A DNA stretch of 62,403 nt, the filler included, from Dugesia japonica (Eukaryota), in assembly GCA_001938525.1 (NCBI GenBank). It is 6 parts of 6 records of this genome, joined end to end, with 100 filler letters (N's around TTAATTAATTAA, not from the genome) between each part and the next. Parts side by side here need not be neighbours in the genome. Positions count along the whole stretch, not along the records: positions 1 to 9,331 come from MQRL01622416.1; 5 more parts are not named here. One strand, written 5' to 3'. The stretch's first letter is position 1. Each line of letters begins with the position of its first letter. A program made the position numbers and the translations under genes. Under the pieces are notes generated by a model, which saw only the letters and a program-made list of their open reading frames with translations, did not search any database and was not told the DNA's origin. Shown piece after piece: positions 1 through 9,430 of the stretch.

Positions 1-435
1 CTTTGTGATTTCGTTTAATAATATTTCTTTTTATTATTTACCGATTTATTCATTTATGATTTTAATAATGTTTATTTCTATTCTATATCATTTCTTTTCG
101 GTTCTAATTTCAATAAGAATTTCTAACGTATTCAAAGTTCTTTATCTCTAATTTCTTGATTAACTCAAATTCTTTTCTAACTGAGCTGTTTCAGCCCAAC
201 ACATATATTTATTTATATTTATATACGTATTTATATTTGTGTCTTTGATAGATAATTAATGTTCCATCTTTTGTAATAATAAGAAATGGAAATTATTATA
301 TCATAATTTAACCTATGATATATGAAATAATATGTTAAAATTTGATATATATATTTCGATGAATCAGAAATGATTCAGAGTTTTTTGTTATTTAATAAAT
401 ACTTGCAATAGATTGATTTTGTACTCTAACCTAAC

Positions 436-610
436 ATGGCGACCACACAGGCTCTAATAAACAGACTTTTACCAAATTTATATGATAGAAGAATGGATCT
501 ATAAGCATTCATTTTAGATTGCCGGAGATTTGTTCACATCGCAAATATTGACTAAAATTAAAGAGGATTAATCATCAAAACAAAAATCAACCGAAAATTG
601 ATTCCAATTT
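436..610 (+). pseudogene. Gypsy-type gag N-terminal fragment (stop-disrupted)
   Basis: Reads MATTQALINRLLPNLYDRRMDL*AFILDCRRF. This aligns by eye with the gag N-terminus at ~42770 (NTDAITERL*PKIFCRGDDLEKFIKRCGIYF). Confidence 0.55.
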
Positions 611-1538
611 AATGGACAATTCATTCTTCTATGTCTTGTATCTCCNCAGCAGAAACATGCTTCCGGTGCAAAACTGCTTCTCGTGGAGGATTTTTTCCTT
701 TGGCTTTGCAATAAAACTTATTGACTTTATTGTTTCGGGCCAGGCTTTGCGTCTGAATTTTATTTGCGCGATACTGATCCTCATTGAAAACAATTGGCCG
801 ACTTCTTGTACTTGGATCATTTTGAGTATTCATTCGTGAATGAGTTTTTAAAAACTTTGACTGATAATCATCTTTCTTCACTGTATCTGCATAGCTTTTT
901 TTTTACCACATTAACGGAATATGCCAATATTAATTTATCCAAATTGTTGGATAATTCTCGTCTTTGCACATCAGTAAGTTCTGGTTGAAGAACAAAAGAT
1001 TCTTTCAATTTTTTGCTCCTTACACCATTAATTACAAATATTGTTGCAATTTCATCTAGAGATTTTTACTCGTAAAAACTTTGTTTACTATTTTTCTGAC
1101 CATTAACTCAAAATTACGATATTTTTCAGTTGGGTTTTGTTTGATCTTCGACAAAATTATTATTTTATCCACCAGTGTCTCTGAAATCACAAATGACTCA
1201 CGAAACCATTTTTCTCAGACCTTGTTCGTCAAAATTCTATCTTCTTTGTATTTTTCCACCCATAATTCATTCACATCTTGTCTCATTAACATATAAAACG
1301 CCAATGGTAGCTCCATTTGATTAAACGCAACAAATTCTTTTTTCTTCNNNNNNNNNNNNNNNNNNNNNNNNNNNNNNNNNNNNNNNNNNNNNNNNNNTTT
1401 GATTAAACGCAACAAATTCTTTTTTCTTCTGAATTCATTCATCAGTTGCTTTAGATAAACCCTTGAAAAAGGTTGGCTTTGGAATAAGTAATTCTTGTGT
1501 TGAAGACGGCAGCTTTGCAAAAATCTTTTGGGGATCAT
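605..1538 (-). mobile_element. Degenerate LTR-retrotransposon gag with CCHC zinc knuckle
   Basis: Frameshifted minus-strand reading gives KSYADTVKK (SYA motif) and a C-terminal CFCxGDTRHRRMNCP (CX2CX4HX4C) at ~612-660. Confidence 0.7.
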
Positions 1539-2299
1539 TTTTTTCTTTTTTCGTCAGTACGCTTATTTTGGCGTGGTCGTCAGTTAAAAGGTTAATGATA
1601 ATTAAAATAACAATCCTTGATTAGTTTGTTAAAAATTAAAAAAATTCTTAATAAGATCAACATAAACACCTTTACCGATTTTTCGCTTACAGCCTATCAT
1701 TTCTTCGTCCACCGCTTCTAGGATCCAAACGAGAAAAATGAGACAGTTGGCCCATCTTTTTTCGTTTGAGCCCCTAAAAAATTCGCATAATTGTTGAGTG
1801 GTGTGTAGTATTCATTATCGCTTGCACACAACTATCATATCATACTCAGTTGGGACATTCCAAAAAACTTGGGTTGAATGTGATTAAGGTAATCTTTTTT
1901 TAGGAATATTGAATTAAAATATATTAAATTTTCTATTTAATTAAACAATGCATTTCAAATTTGGCAAAGTAAATATGGAACGTAAAAATCTGATTTTAGA
2001 CCGTTTATATAATAAAAAAATATGATTATTCGAAAAGTAAATTAGTTAATAGCGTTAAAATTATCATATTTCATCATCAAATTTACAAATCAGCTAGAAT
2101 AAATTATACGTTAAAATTGCTATTAATAATGACACAAAAATGAAACGGAATTTCTCAAAAATAAAATAAATATTTCCCAAAGAAATCAGAATCGAGCTCC
2201 AATAATTCTTTACTCTCGTATATCATTATTTCACCCTCATTTGCTTGTGATTTCTATAGCTTTGTTGCACATAATTCTCTTTCAATTTCCTGTAATTAT

Positions 2300-2545
2300 G
2301 TCGAATTATCTGTGGTCCAAAATTCGTTTTAAAATCTCTGTGATTTTCGCGAACCACTTTTGACAAAATTCCCTTTAAATTCTCTATAGCTTGTCAATAT
2401 CATTTCCGACAACATTCACTTTAAATTTTTAATAATTTTCTCGGATTATTTTCGACCAAAATTTATTTAGCTTCCCGATAATTTTCTCAAACTTATATTG
2501 GACGCAAATTCATTAAGATTTTCGATAATCTTCTCAAATTTATAT
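2300..2545. repeat. Degenerate ~41-bp tandem repeat
   Basis: Recurring units such as ...gaccaaaattt...ccgataattttctcaaacttatatt / gacgcaaattc...tcgataatcttctcaaatttatatt. Confidence 0.5.
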
Positions 2546-2825
2546 TATATTTCGAATTAGAATCTCGGCGAGCCCTACCATCTATGTTATCTTACGCACT
2601 CGGATATAAGTTCAAATATGATTACTAATAATAATAAAATTTACTTTTCAAAATATTTAGTCACTTATCCAATTGATAATACTATTTCTTCTAAATTTTA
2701 TATCTGATTACCACTTGTGATAAAAGATTCTTTCTCTTGTCAAAACTTTGTTTTTAAATCAAAAATAAATTTAACTTTTCTGCATTTTTGTGTTTGCAAT
2801 TTGGTTTTATTATTATCGTCACCGA

Positions 2826-3477
2826 CAGAGCTGAATTTTTCTATACGCTAACTAGGCTTCAGACTAGGGCCTCGAGACTAAGAGGGGCCTACATTCCAAA
2901 TGTTAGCAAAATTAAAATTACACTTTTCTAAAAACAGTGAACACCAAAACACTGGACCGAAAATAAGGAGAAATATCCCACTAAGCATCAGCGCTTTACG
3001 AGGGGACACGCGCCAAACCAGAAGAAAGGCGAGCGCAATGCGTCTATAGTAATAGGTAGGTAGAGCAGTTCCACTACGCGGCTGTGGCAGCTCCGGCAGG
3101 AAGGGGTTCCGGGTCCTGCTCGTTGGGTGGAATCTAGGGAAAGCTCTCTGAAAAAACTCTTCAAAACATTCCACATTGTCGCAAAATATTCAAGTGGCCT
3201 TCCCCAATGTGGAATCAATCTTACGGCTGTTTTTCAGTTTAAAAGTCACTAATTGTACTTGAGAAAGGTCATTTTCAAGACTTTAAAATATCAAAAATCA
3301 ATTAAGAAGCAGAATGACCCAGATGAGGTTGTCTTCATTGAGTATTTTGTGCATCGAAAATGAGACCTTCAGAAAAATTGATCTTGCTGAACTTACAGAA
3401 GACTTTTGTGTAAAAGAGTGTAGAAAGAAATTCTTCTTATCTATTTCGTTTTAAATGTATACTTGAATTAAATCAGT
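2826..3477 (+). mobile_element. hAT (Tip100/ZMYM1-like) deletion derivative with C-terminal dimerisation domain
   Basis: Starts CAGAGCTGAATTT...CTAGGCTTCAGACTAGGGCCTC, a Tip100-like end. 3182-3440 reads AFPNVESILRLFFSLKVTNCT*ERSFSRL*NIKNQLRSRMTQMRLSSLSILCIENE, the hAT dimerisation domain. Confidence 0.85.
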
Positions 3478-5044
3478 NNNNNNNNNNNNNNNNNNNNNNN
3501 NNNNNNNNNNNNNNNNNNNNNNNNNNNNNNNNNNNNNNNNNNTTGTTTGAATAAAGATCCATTTTTGGTTTAGTTAAGGACTTAAAATTCATAATAATTC
3601 CTACTTGTTAGATGAGTTTGAAATACTCATCGGATCACTTATATCAAAACTCGATTACATAGCAAAATTTATTCACAAACAAAACTATAAACATAAATTT
3701 GCTTTTTTCAAACAAATTTAAAAATTCATATTCAATAATGAAAAATATCAAATACCAGCATTTGTTAAATATTTTAATTTTAAAAGTTTATTAATATCAA
3801 ATTTTAAAATACAGTAAAAATATACATTTCATTTAAATATCTTAATACACATTAAAATTTTATATTCAACACACATTCTACCTTTCTCATTCCCTAGTTA
3901 TACACAATTAAATTTTAAAAATTTATTTTATAAATTATTTTTCTTATAATATATTTATTATATTTATTTATTTATTATATTTAATATATTTATCTTATAA
4001 TACTTAAACGTTAAATGTGAATTATTATTAAATAAATTTATCTGAATTGAATTTGGTTTAATCTTCAAAGTATTGAATATTTTTAATTTAGTTTTATAGA
4101 AATTAAAATTTTTATTGTGTATTTTAGTTTCGTAGTCAAAGATCTTCATTATTTGAGTTTTGTTTATTTGTAAATGTTGTGTGTTATTAGTTATTGTTAC
4201 AAGTACTATCTATGATACTGAGAATAAATGTCCAAATAAGTGTTCTCATTACTCGGCCAATCATCGTCATTCATTTTAGAATTTCACCATCTCATTGGTT
4301 GATTTTACTTTTACCTCTACCGATACACATTGGTGCGGGTGATTTATACAGCTCCTTCGGTGTTGCTGTATAAGTAACCTCGTTTTCACTCGATTTTCTG
4401 CGGGTCACCTCATATAGAAAACTGGGATGGAGGAAGATGATTCACGTCGATCACAGTAAATTGGAAGAAATTATCAAAATCAATAATAAAATAAAGAAAA
4501 TTATTAATCAAAATAATTAATTACAAAAAAAAAGAAAAAACTGTTAATTAATTTAGAAATAAATTAAATTAAAATTAGAACAAAATTCGTTTTATACGAA
4601 TAACTTTGCGTCGGGAAGTCACCGGAGCTGGGTTTAAGAAAATTGGGAAAGGATTTGAATTGGGTCATTAGAATTTTGACACTAGAAAATGGTGCCACCA
4701 TCAGAGGGTCGCCAGGAAGATTTTAAGATCTATCCAATAGCATCCTACAATTAAAAAATAAGACAAAGAACAAAAAAACAAGACAACAAAAAACATTTTC
4801 TACAAGTTTAGCAACAACAATTTTACTAAGTATTTCTACTACATTAGAGAAAGAACTTTTCACGGGAGAATATTTAATTTAATACGGTATTTTACACGAG
4901 AAGAAAGATTCTACTAATTAACGAAAGAGATTGAATCGAATCGGACCAATAAACTCAGGTGCAACTAATTTATATTTAAGTGAATCAACCGTTGCAGAAA
5001 TCCTTATTTTAATAGTAAGTGTCGTTGCTGTATTACATTACTGT

Positions 5045-5290
5045 AAAAATAATTTATGCCATTAATAATAAACATGTTTAAAATTTGATTTATGGACTTA
5101 AATTGAAATTATAAGAAATTATCAATAAAAATAATTTATGCCATTAATAGTAACCATGCTTAAGATTCGATTTATGCATTTATATTGAAATTATAAGTAA
5201 TCATCACAACAATAATTTCTGCCATTAATAATAAGAACCGCTTAAAGCTGGACTTTTGCATCTATATTGAAATTACAGGAAATCTTCAAT
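5045..5290. repeat. ~82-bp tandem repeat, 3 units
   Basis: AATAATTTATGCCATTAATA...TTGAAATTAT recurs at ~5048, ~5129 and ~5211. Confidence 0.8.
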
Positions 5291-6600
5291 TAACCGATAA
5301 ATCATAAAGTACATCATCGAAGTTTACGATAATTTGATTTATGTAAATTAACCCAACAATTGTAACCAGATAGTAAGATAAGCAGGCGTGAATTTTAGCA
5401 GGGGCGATCTAGATTTTTTTTGTTTTCCTTCGACAAATTCGACTAGCAACAATTCGATAATATAACCTGAAGAATATAGTCTCTTTATATTTACAATAGA
5501 CAACTTAATAATTACCTCACTCAGAAGTAGATGTGAATAATCTACTAATCAATGATTGCTGAATGAGTCACCCAAGTGTGAATATTGAAGTCAGAATACA
5601 GATTAGTATCTAACCGCTAACCCTATTGAAAAAATCTACATTTTCCGTCGGGGCAAGTCATGATTGTTCATTCAACGAATGCTGCCATTGTCTAGTCCAA
5701 TTTTAACTCTGTTACGTTAGTGGATTTCTTTTCTAGAAATGGAATATTCAATCGTCTCAACATATAACTGCGACCTAAGAATATGCTTCATTCATGATGG
5801 ATCACTTTTTTTATTTCTAAGTCCTAGATCGAATAGAGAAGCCAGGTGATTAAAGTCCCCAATATATTATTCAATCTGCATCCAGGCATAGTGGAACTTT
5901 TAGGTGACAGCGAGTTCATAACGTTGAATGGAAATGTTATAGTTCTCGTGATGGAAATTGAAAAAGTGATTTTCATAATAAGTTGGAGACAGTTGACGAT
6001 GCTACAGATCCTTTGACAGTCAGCTAACACCGTTATAGCCCAAGTTAGCGGTAAGAACTTCATCGACTGTAACATTTAATAAATTGAAATCTTTGTGATT
6101 AGTATCATTATTATAATTAATAAAAAAAAATTTTCTCTATTATTTTATTGATGTTATTAGAGTAGTTACCATTGGCGGAATGATTAGTCCTATTATAAAT
6201 TGTTTTCTATTTTGCGTGATTGATGTTTACCAATAATTCGGTCATCATATCATGACTAAACATTGTGGTTACGGTCACTGTAGGTCTATCTACTACCTCT
6301 GAGATCGCAAATAATATAAACTACGGGAATTACTGCGTGTTTGAAGAATTTTAGAGTACCTCATACTAAGTATTGGATAGTATCACCCCAGAGATTATAA
6401 AGTCTTTTTCTATTATACATTCGTGCTATTCGTGAACATACGGGATTAGCAAGGGTCTTCTGGGTACTTCTTTTTCAGTCAGTGTTATAGTCAGAAGTCG
6501 GTATGGCAAAATAAATGCTTTCCGTACATTCATGTACGAATCATACAAATCTCTTTTGAATCTACCTTATCAATATGTTAATTAAGGAATAGATTTTCCC

Positions 6601-6786
6601 ATGGGTGACATTCTAACAAGAACACTCCGTTGGTTGCGACAAGAGCGGGAGTAATGTCGTAGGAAACAGTTAATCAGACGTCTACTCTTTCCCAATCTCA
6701 TTCCGTCACCAGACGAATTGGACCTCCAGTGCTTCGTAGAATTACTTCTTTTACCTTGTGCCGTTGATATGGACGAGGGAGACTGA
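6601..6786 (+). pseudogene. Element ORF1 homolog, one in-frame stop
   Basis: MGDILTRTLRWLRQERE*CRRKQLIRRLLFPNLIPSPDELDLQCFVELLLLPCAVDMDEGD*. Ungapped 32/59 identity to 14843-15022. Confidence 0.75.
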
Positions 6787-6932
6787 CTACCATATATGAT
6801 TTTTTTTCCAATAAATTGCATTAAGTATAGTTGATGTGTTTACCTCCTTATGTAAAATTGTTAATTTATGTTTGTTTAGTGTAATATAGCCTAAATTATA
6901 ATTATAACTTGTTATAGAGCCAAATCCAACTA

Positions 6933-7316
6933 ATGGAGTATATTTGGGAACGGGTAGTCGATCGAAGAACTCGCCGTATAATCTTTAGGCGCCACCATAA
7001 CCCTTTTAACCGAGATGCAGGCATCTTGGTGGATCGATCGAATCTGCCTCCCGTGGAAGCCGCAGTAACTCGCATCTAGAACTTCGGCGAGAGGTAAAAT
7101 TTTCAACAGTGGAATAGGCCAATGCGAAGCCATGATACACCTTTTAATTTCCAACCTCCGGCTCCACCCCCAGTCATGCAAGCTTTCATCACCAATTTGC
7201 TCTGGGGCGCTAGGGAACCCTCTGGTGTTGCAGATGTTGAAAACACCGTTCCTACTACTATCGTTCAACTTTTTACTAACTGATCCGGCCCAGTGGATGC
7301 ATTGGATCTCATGTAA
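6933..7316 (+). pseudogene. Element ORF2 homolog, three in-frame stops
   Basis: MEYIWERVVDRRTRRIIFRRHHNPFNRDAGILVDRSNL... has 22/38 identity to the N-terminus of 15167-15361. Confidence 0.75.
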
Positions 7317-8113
7317 TTATTATATAAAATAAATTTACCCTGTTTGACTCATTCTAGCGTTTAATAAATTCGGAATAATAGGGAAAACATGAGACGGGAG
7401 GTCAACCGCTTTATGCTAAATGGCTAACTTAGGGGCATTAGGCTAAATTCTTGAACGAGTTCCCCGAAGGCTGTTGTTCCCCAGCCACCCGTTGTTTCGA
7501 TATGTCTGTGTGATGTCAACAGAACGATTGACACTTGCGATGGAAATGTTAGATCCTAGTGGGCTCAGATACCTAACAAGAAATTATCTCCAAATTAATT
7601 AATAGGTGTTTAGGTAAAACGTTATTTTATTTATTATAAATAATATAAATAAAGATAAATCAATTTTTGGGACTCGCTAATTTTAAAATTTATTTTAGGA
7701 AAATTTAGGATACCTGTTAACAAATATGTCTAACAGTATCTTTCAATTAATATTTTAATAACTGTTTTGTTTACTAGTCAGTAACTGACTTTTGAAGTAG
7801 TGTTACTGAATTATTATATAAAATAATCAAACTAGTCTTTAACAGACTTCAAAAAAATAATTATCAATTTTAAAAATAAAAACTAAAATTGATATTATTC
7901 AAGAATTGTAATCCCAGTTATATCAACTGGATTTACAATTTTCATTATTTAAAAATAAAAATTACTTATTCAAATAATTTCTGCAAATAATAGTACATAC
8001 TTAAGTATGTAAGTATAATAAGTCATTAATCTGTGTTTGGAAAAAGTAAAAAGGGGATATACTTTGACTTTAGCTAGCTCAAAATGCTGGATGCTTTGNA
8101 ATATGCACAATAT

Positions 8114-8350
8114 TTTAGCTCAATAGAATTGGAAAAATCATAATATCAAGGATCTCAATTTTGTAATTGCAGCAGCGCCAGGTAAGTTCCAGTAAATGAT
8201 GAATAAAGTAAACGGAAAAATAAAGGAGCAATGGTTTACCTAGATTATATACTCATATTTACCAAGGGAGCAACACTATGAAATAGTCAATAAAGTATTG
8301 ACAGAAATTAAGAATCTCGATATAAGAGTTAACCTGAAGAGATGTCAATT
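8114..8350 (+). mobile_element. Gypsy reverse transcriptase fragment (second copy of the 44120-44430 family)
   Basis: Shares long nucleotide stretches (aattgcagcagc.ccaggta.gttccag...atgatgaataaagtaa...ggagcaacactatgaaata) with 44120-44430. Confidence 0.85.
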
Positions 8351-9331
8351 NNNNNNNNNNNNNNNNNNNNNNNNNNNNNNNNNNNNNNNNNNNNNNNNNN
8401 NNNNNNNNNNNNNNNNNNNNNNNNNNNNNNNNNNNNNNNNNNNNNNNNNNNNNNNNNNNNNNNNNNNNNNNNNNNNNNNNNNNNNNNNNNNNNNNNNNNN
8501 NNNNNNNNNNNNNNNNATTGAAAAGTCAATCATATTTAATGAAACATAATTACAGACGATGCATTGGTAAATTTAAAAATAGTTATTAAATTAATAATTG
8601 TAACGAAAACATAATTAAGACGGTTGTCAAATATTTAATTTATTGCAACATATTATAATTTTAACAAAAATGAATTAACATCACTTTTTTCACATATTCG
8701 AAAATCAATATGTATTAATTGATTTTTAAATATTTCTAAGGTGGACTTAAAATAAAAAAGAAATTTCTATCAATAATTTTATATACACAAAAGCTTTTTA
8801 TAACAGTTATTATAAAATATTCTTCTTAAATATATTAACCATTTCTAAAATTTGTAAACTGTAAACTTAATATATTTCCACACATTAGAACACGAACCGT
8901 TCTATTATTTAAAATAAATTTTTTAGACTGAATATAGAATTTAATTTATATATAATAAACAATAACAATGAACAATAAGATAAAAAATTTATTTTTAAAT
9001 ATATTAGATGTAACAACAACCATTTTTAAATTAATGATTAATTGTTTTCATTTCGGCTTAGCTTGACTACCTTAACNNNNNNNNNNNNNNNNNNNNNNNN
9101 NNNNNNNNNNNNNNNNNNNNNNNNNNNNNNNNNNNNNNNNNNNNNNNNNNNNNNNNNNNNNNNNNNNNNNTAATCAGATTTTATTTTGTAATCAAATCTC
9201 ATAGGATTGACAGATAAAATTCATCATTTTAATACTGATTTCAAATTAGCTCAAAGATTCCATTTCATTAATATATCTAAAATAAAACATAATAAAAATA
9301 TATATTCATTCCATTATGAATTTTAAAATTA

Positions 9332-9430
9332 NNNNNNNNNNNNNNNNNNNNNNNNNNNNNNNNNNNNNNNNNNNNTTAATTAATTAANNNNNNNNNNNNN
9401 NNNNNNNNNNNNNNNNNNNNNNNNNNNNNN
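9332..9430. other. Artificial scaffold linker N44-TTAATTAATTAA-N44 (12-mer also at 19551, 27995, 41925, 50452)
   Basis: An identical 12-mer with stops in all six frames is centred in ~100-nt N spacers five times. Confidence 0.9.

What the first reader, a model, noticed from the sequence alone, without database searches (positions are those of the whole stretch)
4400..7578. A second, deeply diverged copy keeps the same ORF order
Copy A shows homologous blocks in the same order and on the same strand as copy B: W....RVARKIL vs W...RVAKKIL, STTSEI vs STTPEM, ORF1, ORF2, GGQPLY..PEGCCS vs GSQPLY..PEGCFS. The 3' terminus is similar (CTCAGAT..CC.AACA). The spacers are not alignable by eye while the peptides are, which implies selection on the proteins before these copies decayed. 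A scaffold linker at 9332 separates the copies, so their proximity may be artificial.
Basis: seen in the sequence. Interest (0 to 1): 0.75.

Follow-up and report, generated by a model that had tools for sequence, protein, structure and literature searches.

The report
Eroded non-coding island, no genes

Summary
Copy B lies outside the piece I was given, so I could not repeat the comparison.

Nothing in copy A supports proteins. The strings lie in three frames inside short open stretches. The longest open frame (128 codons, minus strand) is reached by 5-7% of composition-matched shuffles. About 53 open segments match no Pfam family. No relative came from an exhaustive HMMER search of 1.84 billion protein representatives, three word-index searches, PDB, or viral, metagenome and prokaryote scans. 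I found no LTR, TIR, tail, tRNA, Rfam family or significant target-site duplication.

What is there is a GC-richer island (about 4150-7580; 34% GC against 16-18% in the flanks). AT-rich spacers interrupt it, and one holds an 82-bp x3 tandem repeat related to flank DNA. The one weak sign of old coding is a period-3 signal at about 5790-6130.

Best reading: an eroded, non-coding remnant of an old dispersed repeat or pseudogene. Low interest.

The parts
4150..7580 (.). GC-richer mosaic island (34% GC) embedded in 16-18% GC DNA. The right edge is sharp at about 7580; the left edge at about 4150-4200 is set by composition only.
   Evidence: Composition profiles and region statistics. The island alternates patches of 34-52% GC with spacers of 12-22% GC.
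4690..4725 (+).
4476..4800 (+). A-rich low-complexity DNA on the + strand (AT skew up to +0.46) with short 13-22 bp tandem arrays, interrupted by the 4600-4735 GC patch.
5044..5290 (.). Tandem repeat, 82-bp unit x3, 80% matches, inside an AT-rich spacer. Part of the unit recurs downstream of the island at about 7947-8005.
   Evidence: Self-blastn gives 5102-5164 vs 7947-8005 at 76% (E 3.6e-5) and 5005-5233 vs 7751-7995 at 61%. Alignment.
5790..6130 (+). The only stretch with a codon-like period-3 signal. It holds a 59-codon open segment on + (5837-6013) and an 83-codon one on - (5827-6075). Codon-position composition fits the + frame better (purine-rich first position). Possible relic of old coding sequence; no relatives found.
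   Evidence: signal-to-noise 4.5-5.9; 2 of 5000 shuffles for window 5788-6138; 27 windows scanned in the island. Blank searches.
6289..6306 (+).
6933..7079 (+).
   Evidence: Pfam blank. Viral scan blank.
7122..7283 (+). An alternative 66-aa ORF at 7132-7332 lies in another frame.
   Evidence: Pfam blank. Word-index search blank. Viral, prokaryote-genome and PDB searches blank.
6933..7316 (-). Longest open frame of the island, 128 codons, antisense to ORF1 and ORF2. Chance-sized and without relatives.
   Evidence: HMMER against 1.84 billion representatives gave only two marginal repeat-driven LRR matches and no self hit. PDB, viral and metagenome searches blank.
7397..7480 (+). Same frame, but not one open stretch.
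7565..7579 (+). It coincides with the sharp fall in GC content. No A-run or simple-repeat tail follows.
7578..7588 (+). 11-mer AAGAAATTATC directly at the 3' edge. It is also present at 4465-4475 and at 5113-5123 (inside the tandem unit). Candidate target-site duplication, not significant.
   Evidence: 138 of 1000 shuffles give an exact match at least as long.

Best explanation
Region 4400-7578 is part of a roughly 3.4-kb compositional island (about 4150-7580) in very AT-rich, repeat-laden, gap-ridden and apparently eukaryotic nuclear DNA. It codes for nothing today and shows no sign of forming a structured RNA.

Most likely it is the eroded remnant of an old interspersed repeat, or of a pseudogene. 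AT-biased decay and later AT-rich insertions and expansions, such as the 82-bp tandem array, have cut it into GC-richer patches.

If a similar series of patches exists on another scaffold, it reflects residual nucleotide homology between two old copies of a dispersed sequence. That homology is visible only where sequence complexity is high, and it does not indicate protein-level selection.

Shown: the strings exist; no open frame exceeds chance; no protein, RNA-family, viral or transposon hallmark was found; the composition is mosaic. Inferred: that the island was once one unit, that it is a repeat copy, and that the spacers are secondary.
For: 1. The strings lie in three frames within short open stretches.
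2. The longest open frame, 128 codons, is reached in 5-7% of shuffles.
3. About 53 ORFs and open segments on both strands gave no Pfam match below E 0.1.
4. Exhaustive HMMER of the 128-codon frame against 1.84 billion representatives gave only two marginal, repeat-inflated LRR hits.
5. Word-index searches of ORF2 and of the 5837-6013 segment were blank.
6. PDB was blank.
7. Viral (7 scans), metagenome (2) and prokaryote-genome (2) scans, plus phage and plasmid blastn, were blank.
8. There is no tRNA, no Rfam family in the island, and fold z-scores of -1.2 and +0.5.
9. There is no LTR or TIR and no significant flanking duplication.
10. The island is a mosaic of 34-52% GC patches and 12-22% GC spacers, with a sharp edge at 7580.
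11. One spacer carries a tandem repeat related to DNA outside the island, which fits secondary interruption.
Against:
- Eukaryotic genome DNA cannot be searched with these tools, so copy number is unknown.
- A period-3 signal at about 5790-6130 hints that at least one patch was once coding.
- Sensitivity is limited. Pfam cannot call pieces under about 50 aa.
- The word-index search only sees proteins of 0.55-1.75 times the query length, so longer relatives of the + strand ORFs would be missed.
- Only the minus-strand 128-codon frame had the exhaustive search.
Confidence: 0.5

Rival explanations
1. A 5'-truncated, heavily decayed copy of an autonomous non-LTR retroelement (the reader's implied 'ORF1/ORF2, shared 3' end, unknown 5' end, TSD' picture).
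For: Undefined 5' edge. An 11-mer repeated at 4465 and directly after the 3' edge. Internal tandem repeats.
Against: No trace of a reverse transcriptase, endonuclease or ORF1-type domain in about 53 open segments. No A-rich or simple-repeat tail after 7579. The 11-mer is not significant and also occurs in the tandem unit. The 'ORFs' are about 50 codons and chance-sized.
Confidence: 0.15
2. There is no homology at all. The island is unique intergenic DNA, and the reader's co-linear peptide matches to the other piece are chance resemblances picked out by eye.
For: The one quoted pair still visible is weak (STTSEI vs STTPEM, 4 of 6). No relatives were found anywhere. The strings lie in different frames.
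Against: Five co-linear blocks on one strand, including a 7-residue exact core (RVARKIL) and two 6-mers, would be unlikely by chance if they were faithfully reported. I cannot check them.
Confidence: 0.15
3. A lineage-restricted gene, or its pseudogenised paralogue, with short exons. The GC-richer patches would be exons and the AT-rich spacers introns, on either strand.
For: The patch-and-spacer pattern resembles exon/intron composition in AT-rich genomes. Plausible GT...AG pairs flank some spacers when read by eye. There is a period-3 signal at about 5790-6130.
Against: No patch has an open frame beyond chance. Patches searched one by one have no relatives. Period-3 is absent from the ORF1/ORF2 patch. 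The spacer tandem repeat has kin outside the island.
Confidence: 0.12
4. An endogenous viral insertion too diverged to recognise.
For: An island of foreign-looking composition with sharp edges. One patch has third-position composition much GC-richer than the host background.
Against: Six protein-guided scans and one DNA-pattern scan of 2.9 million viral contigs, plus Pfam and PDB, gave nothing. The single Pfam line with a viral name (E 0.12, 12 bits) is at chance level for about 50 queries.
Confidence: 0.03

Closest known systems
Old unclassified or non-autonomous interspersed repeats, as catalogued in AT-rich, repeat-rich eukaryotic (for example arthropod) genome annotations
   Same: No coding capacity. 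Patchy preservation. Internal tandem arrays. Embedded among other repeat debris. A possible second diverged copy on another scaffold.
   Different: Copy number and termini are unknown here. No second copy was seen with my tools, so membership of a repeat family is inferred, not shown.
5'-truncated non-LTR (LINE-type) retrotransposon copies
   Same: A defined 3' edge with an undefined 5' edge. A short direct repeat at the edges.
   Different: No reverse transcriptase, endonuclease or ORF1 domains. No 3' tail. The flanking repeat is not significant. The ORFs are about 50 codons rather than hundreds.
Duplicated or decayed host gene (pseudogene) with short exons
   Same: GC-richer patches separated by AT-rich spacers. 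One patch has codon-like periodicity.
   Different: No patch has relatives in the protein searches made (1.84 billion representatives for the 128-codon frame; 5.8 billion clusters, length-limited, for two others). No continuous frame. Most patches show no periodicity.

Membership tests
Non-LTR retrotransposon (LINE) | Reverse-transcriptase (and usually endonuclease) domain in a long ORF2 | tested here: not met
   About 53 open segments of 4150-7600, both strands, against Pfam at E up to 1: no RT or EN family. Caveat: short, decayed pieces are hard to detect.
Non-LTR retrotransposon (LINE) | 3' poly-A or simple-repeat tail at the element's end | tested here: not met
   The sequence after 7579 reads AGAAATTATCTCC...; no A-run or microsatellite.
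Non-LTR retrotransposon (LINE) | Target-site duplication flanking the copy | tested here: inconclusive
   The 11-mer lies at 4465-4475 and 7578-7588, but also at 5113-5123. 138 of 1000 shuffles do as well. The 5' end is not independently known.
LTR retrotransposon / endogenous retrovirus | Long terminal direct repeats and gag/pol domains | tested here: not met
   No long direct repeats in 1-9331. No gag, protease, RT or integrase family. An LTR lying beyond the piece cannot be excluded.
TIR DNA transposon | Terminal inverted repeats and a transposase | tested here: not met
   Only AT-rich, low-identity inverted pairs, none at the island's edges. No transposase family (Pfam calls above).
Helitron | 5' TC and 3' CTRR ends with a subterminal GC-rich hairpin; Rep/helicase protein | tested here: not met
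   Read by eye, there is no GC-rich hairpin before the 3' edge. No Rep or helicase family (Pfam calls). The 5' end is unknown.
Endogenous viral element | Recognisable similarity of an open segment to a viral protein | tested here: not met
   Viral-contig scans with six different open segments and one DNA pattern. Pfam, PDB and HMMER representatives all blank.
Protein-coding gene or paralogue | Open frame longer than chance, codon periodicity, relatives | tested here: not met
   Open frames at chance level. Periodicity only at about 5790-6130. No relatives. The spliced model was not joined or tested, by instruction.
Structured non-coding RNA | Rfam family match or thermodynamic stability beyond shuffles | tested here: not met
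   No Rfam hit in the island at E up to 1. z = -1.23 (+) and +0.47 (-) for 6900-7580. No tRNA.
Dispersed repeat family (any class) | Two or more homologous copies at unlinked sites | not testable with these tools
   Copy B is outside my piece. No searchable collection of eukaryotic genome DNA is available. There is no second copy within 1-9331.

The most novel reading that the evidence does not exclude
The island is one copy of a lineage-restricted element or gene family whose only conserved parts are a few very small ORFs or peptide blocks. These would have no relatives among the 1.84 billion protein-cluster representatives searched, and would be kept co-linear in copies that have otherwise diverged beyond nucleotide alignment.
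Probability: 0.05. Interest if true: 0.45.

Novelty: already known. Interest (0 to 1): 0.08.

Why it matters
It matters little. If the best reading holds, this is routine repeat or pseudogene debris in an AT-rich genome, and it should be masked rather than annotated.

The useful lesson is about method. Short peptide matches read by eye out of GC-richer patches are not evidence of selection on proteins. They need a codon-position test between real copies.

The region would be worth a closer look only if such a test showed constraint on the roughly 50-codon ORFs. That would point to a family of conserved micro-ORFs with no known relatives.

Tried and rejected
- **Alternative genetic codes.** Longer 'ORFs' appear only where TAA/TAG are read as sense, as expected in AT-rich DNA. 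Rejected.
- **Fungal RIP.** The indices are negative (TpA/ApT 0.85-0.88, composite 1.09-1.21) and CpG o/e is about 1. Rejected.
- **Structured RNA.** Rfam and folding gave nothing. Rejected.
- **Phage, plasmid or bacterial origin.** blastn and genome-contig scans were blank. Rejected.
- **LRR protein.** The two marginal HMMER hits are repeat-inflated matches to about 46 residues, and the query has no Pfam LRR. Rejected as chance.
- **Target-site duplication from the 11-mer.** Not significant.
- **Finding the source contig or other copies through exact-protein look-ups of four window ORFs.** None is on record.
- **Tool confirmation of a by-eye, from-memory resemblance of 3127-3454 (+) to the C-terminal dimerisation region of hAT transposases.** Pfam and the word-index search were both blank. 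It stays an unconfirmed impression.
Full report
**What I was given.** I hold only the piece 1-9331. The piece is 28.5% GC and holds 377 N: four long runs, which I left untouched, and three single Ns. Under the standard code it has no open frame longer than 128 codons. It has no tRNA. Its only Rfam match is a weak snoRNA-like one outside the region. It reads like non-coding nuclear DNA of a repeat-rich, AT-rich eukaryote. No tool identified the organism.

**Checking the observation.**
- WCHHQRVARKIL 4690-4725
- STTSEI 6289-6306
- GGQPLY 7397-7414
- PEGCCS 7463-7480
- 3' motif CTCAGATACCTAACA 7565-7579

The only ATG ORFs between STTSEI and GGQPLY are 6933-7079 (48 aa), 7122-7283 (53 aa) and 7132-7332 (66 aa). 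I take them to be 'ORF1' and 'ORF2'. No second copy exists within the piece. The comparison with copy B, which is the core of the finding, could not be repeated.

**Are these proteins?** The quoted strings lie in three different frames, each in a short open stretch. The longest open frame of the island is 128 codons (6933-7316), on the minus strand, antisense to ORF1 and ORF2. Dinucleotide shuffles in 200-nt blocks reach that length in 52-68 of 1000 trials.

About 53 ORFs and stop-to-stop segments from both strands gave no Pfam match below E 0.1. The two weakest lines (E 0.12 and 0.27) are what about 50 queries yield by chance.

An exhaustive HMMER search of the 128-codon frame against 1.84 billion cluster representatives returned two marginal hits. 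Both are leucine-rich-repeat proteins whose scores sum several repeats matching about 46 residues of the query. I treat them as chance.

The other searches were blank:
- word-index searches with ORF2 and with the 5837-6013 segment
- PDB
- seven scans of viral contigs
- two scans of metagenome contigs
- two scans of prokaryotic genomes
- blastn against phages and plasmids
- exact-product look-ups for four window ORFs, none on record

**Is it a recognisable mobile element or RNA?** I found no long direct repeats (LTRs) and no terminal inverted repeats. No tail follows the 3' motif. It also occurs inside the tandem unit at 5113-5123, and 138 of 1000 shuffles give an equally long match. A target-site duplication is therefore not established. 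Folding 6900-7580 gives z = -1.23 on the + strand and +0.47 on the - strand.

**What is actually there.**
- A compositional island runs from about 4150-4200 to 7580. It is 34% GC, against 16% to its left and 18% to its right.
- It is a mosaic. Patches of 34-52% GC lie at about 4200-4450, 4600-4735, 5340-6090, 6200-6560, 6600-6800, 6900-7300 and 7400-7580. Spacers of 12-22% GC separate them.
- The 4476-4800 stretch is A-rich on the + strand.
- The spacer at 5044-5290 is an 82-bp x3 tandem repeat. Part of its unit recurs outside the island at about 7947-8005: 76% over 63 nt, and 61% over 251 nt for the wider region. The spacers therefore look like the surrounding AT-rich DNA rather than part of a conserved unit.
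- RIP indices are negative and CpG is not depleted.

**One weak positive sign.** A Fourier test for codon-like periodicity finds nothing over ORF1 and ORF2. It does give signal-to-noise 4.5-5.9 at about 5790-6130. Two of 5000 shuffles match it for one window, and 27 windows were scanned in the island. After correcting for the number of windows this is suggestive rather than firm. Codon-position composition fits the + strand frame of the 59-codon segment 5837-6013 better than the antisense 83-codon frame. That segment has no relatives either.

**Interpretation.** The best-supported reading (about 0.5) is an eroded, now non-coding remnant of an old dispersed repeat or pseudogene. AT-biased decay and AT-rich insertions or expansions have broken it up. 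The 'peptides' are simply how the better-preserved, higher-complexity patches read.

That also explains why blocks would align while spacers do not, without invoking selection. Similarity cannot be seen by eye in 12-22% GC low-complexity DNA.

Rivals:
- a deeply decayed 5'-truncated non-LTR retroelement (0.15)
- no homology at all, with chance matches picked by eye (0.15)
- an orphan gene or paralogue with short exons (0.12)
- an unrecognisable viral insertion (0.03)

**Limits.**
- Eukaryotic genome DNA is not searchable here, so copy number, true termini and the codon-position test between copies remain undone.
- Pfam is insensitive to pieces under about 50 aa.
- The word-index search sees only proteins of 0.55-1.75 times the query length, so longer relatives of the + strand ORFs could be missed.
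- Only one frame had the exhaustive search.
- One search printed bounds of open segments to make references for the scans. I flag this for the record.

**Verdict.** The interpretation cannot be judged without copy B, and nothing in copy A supports its protein half. The feature is ordinary. Interest is 0.08.

Noticed in passing
window 1316-1347 and 1398-1429: Identical 32-mers stand on both sides of a 50-N run. This looks like overlapping contig ends left unmerged by the assembler. I did not fill or resolve the gap.
   Followed up: partly
window 3127-3454 (+): By eye and from memory, short open pieces here resemble the C-terminal dimerisation region of hAT-type transposases. They are split over several frames and truncated upstream. 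Neither Pfam nor the word-index search confirms this, so it remains an impression.
   Followed up: partly
window 570-1560 (-): A run of open segments on the minus strand reads like decayed coding sequence. The longest is 112 codons and spans an N run. No Pfam family was found.
   Followed up: partly
window 2880-3250: A GC-richer patch (about 38-50% GC) with a 103-codon open frame on the minus strand. No Pfam family was found.
   Followed up: partly
window 2421-2546: Tandem repeat of a 47-bp unit, 2.7 copies, 74% matches.
   Followed up: no
window 9170-9232 (-): Weak C/D-box snoRNA-like match: SNORD110, 28.4 bits against a gathering score of 64, E 0.018. It starts right at the edge of an N run and is probably chance.
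   Followed up: no
window 5790-6130: This is the only codon-like period-3 signal in the piece. It coincides with open segments on both strands that have no relatives.
   Followed up: yes
window 5005-5233 vs 7751-7995; 3791-3868 vs 9229-9308: Low-identity (61-76%) similarities link AT-rich stretches inside and outside the island. This suggests a common AT-rich repeat or satellite-like background.
   Followed up: partly
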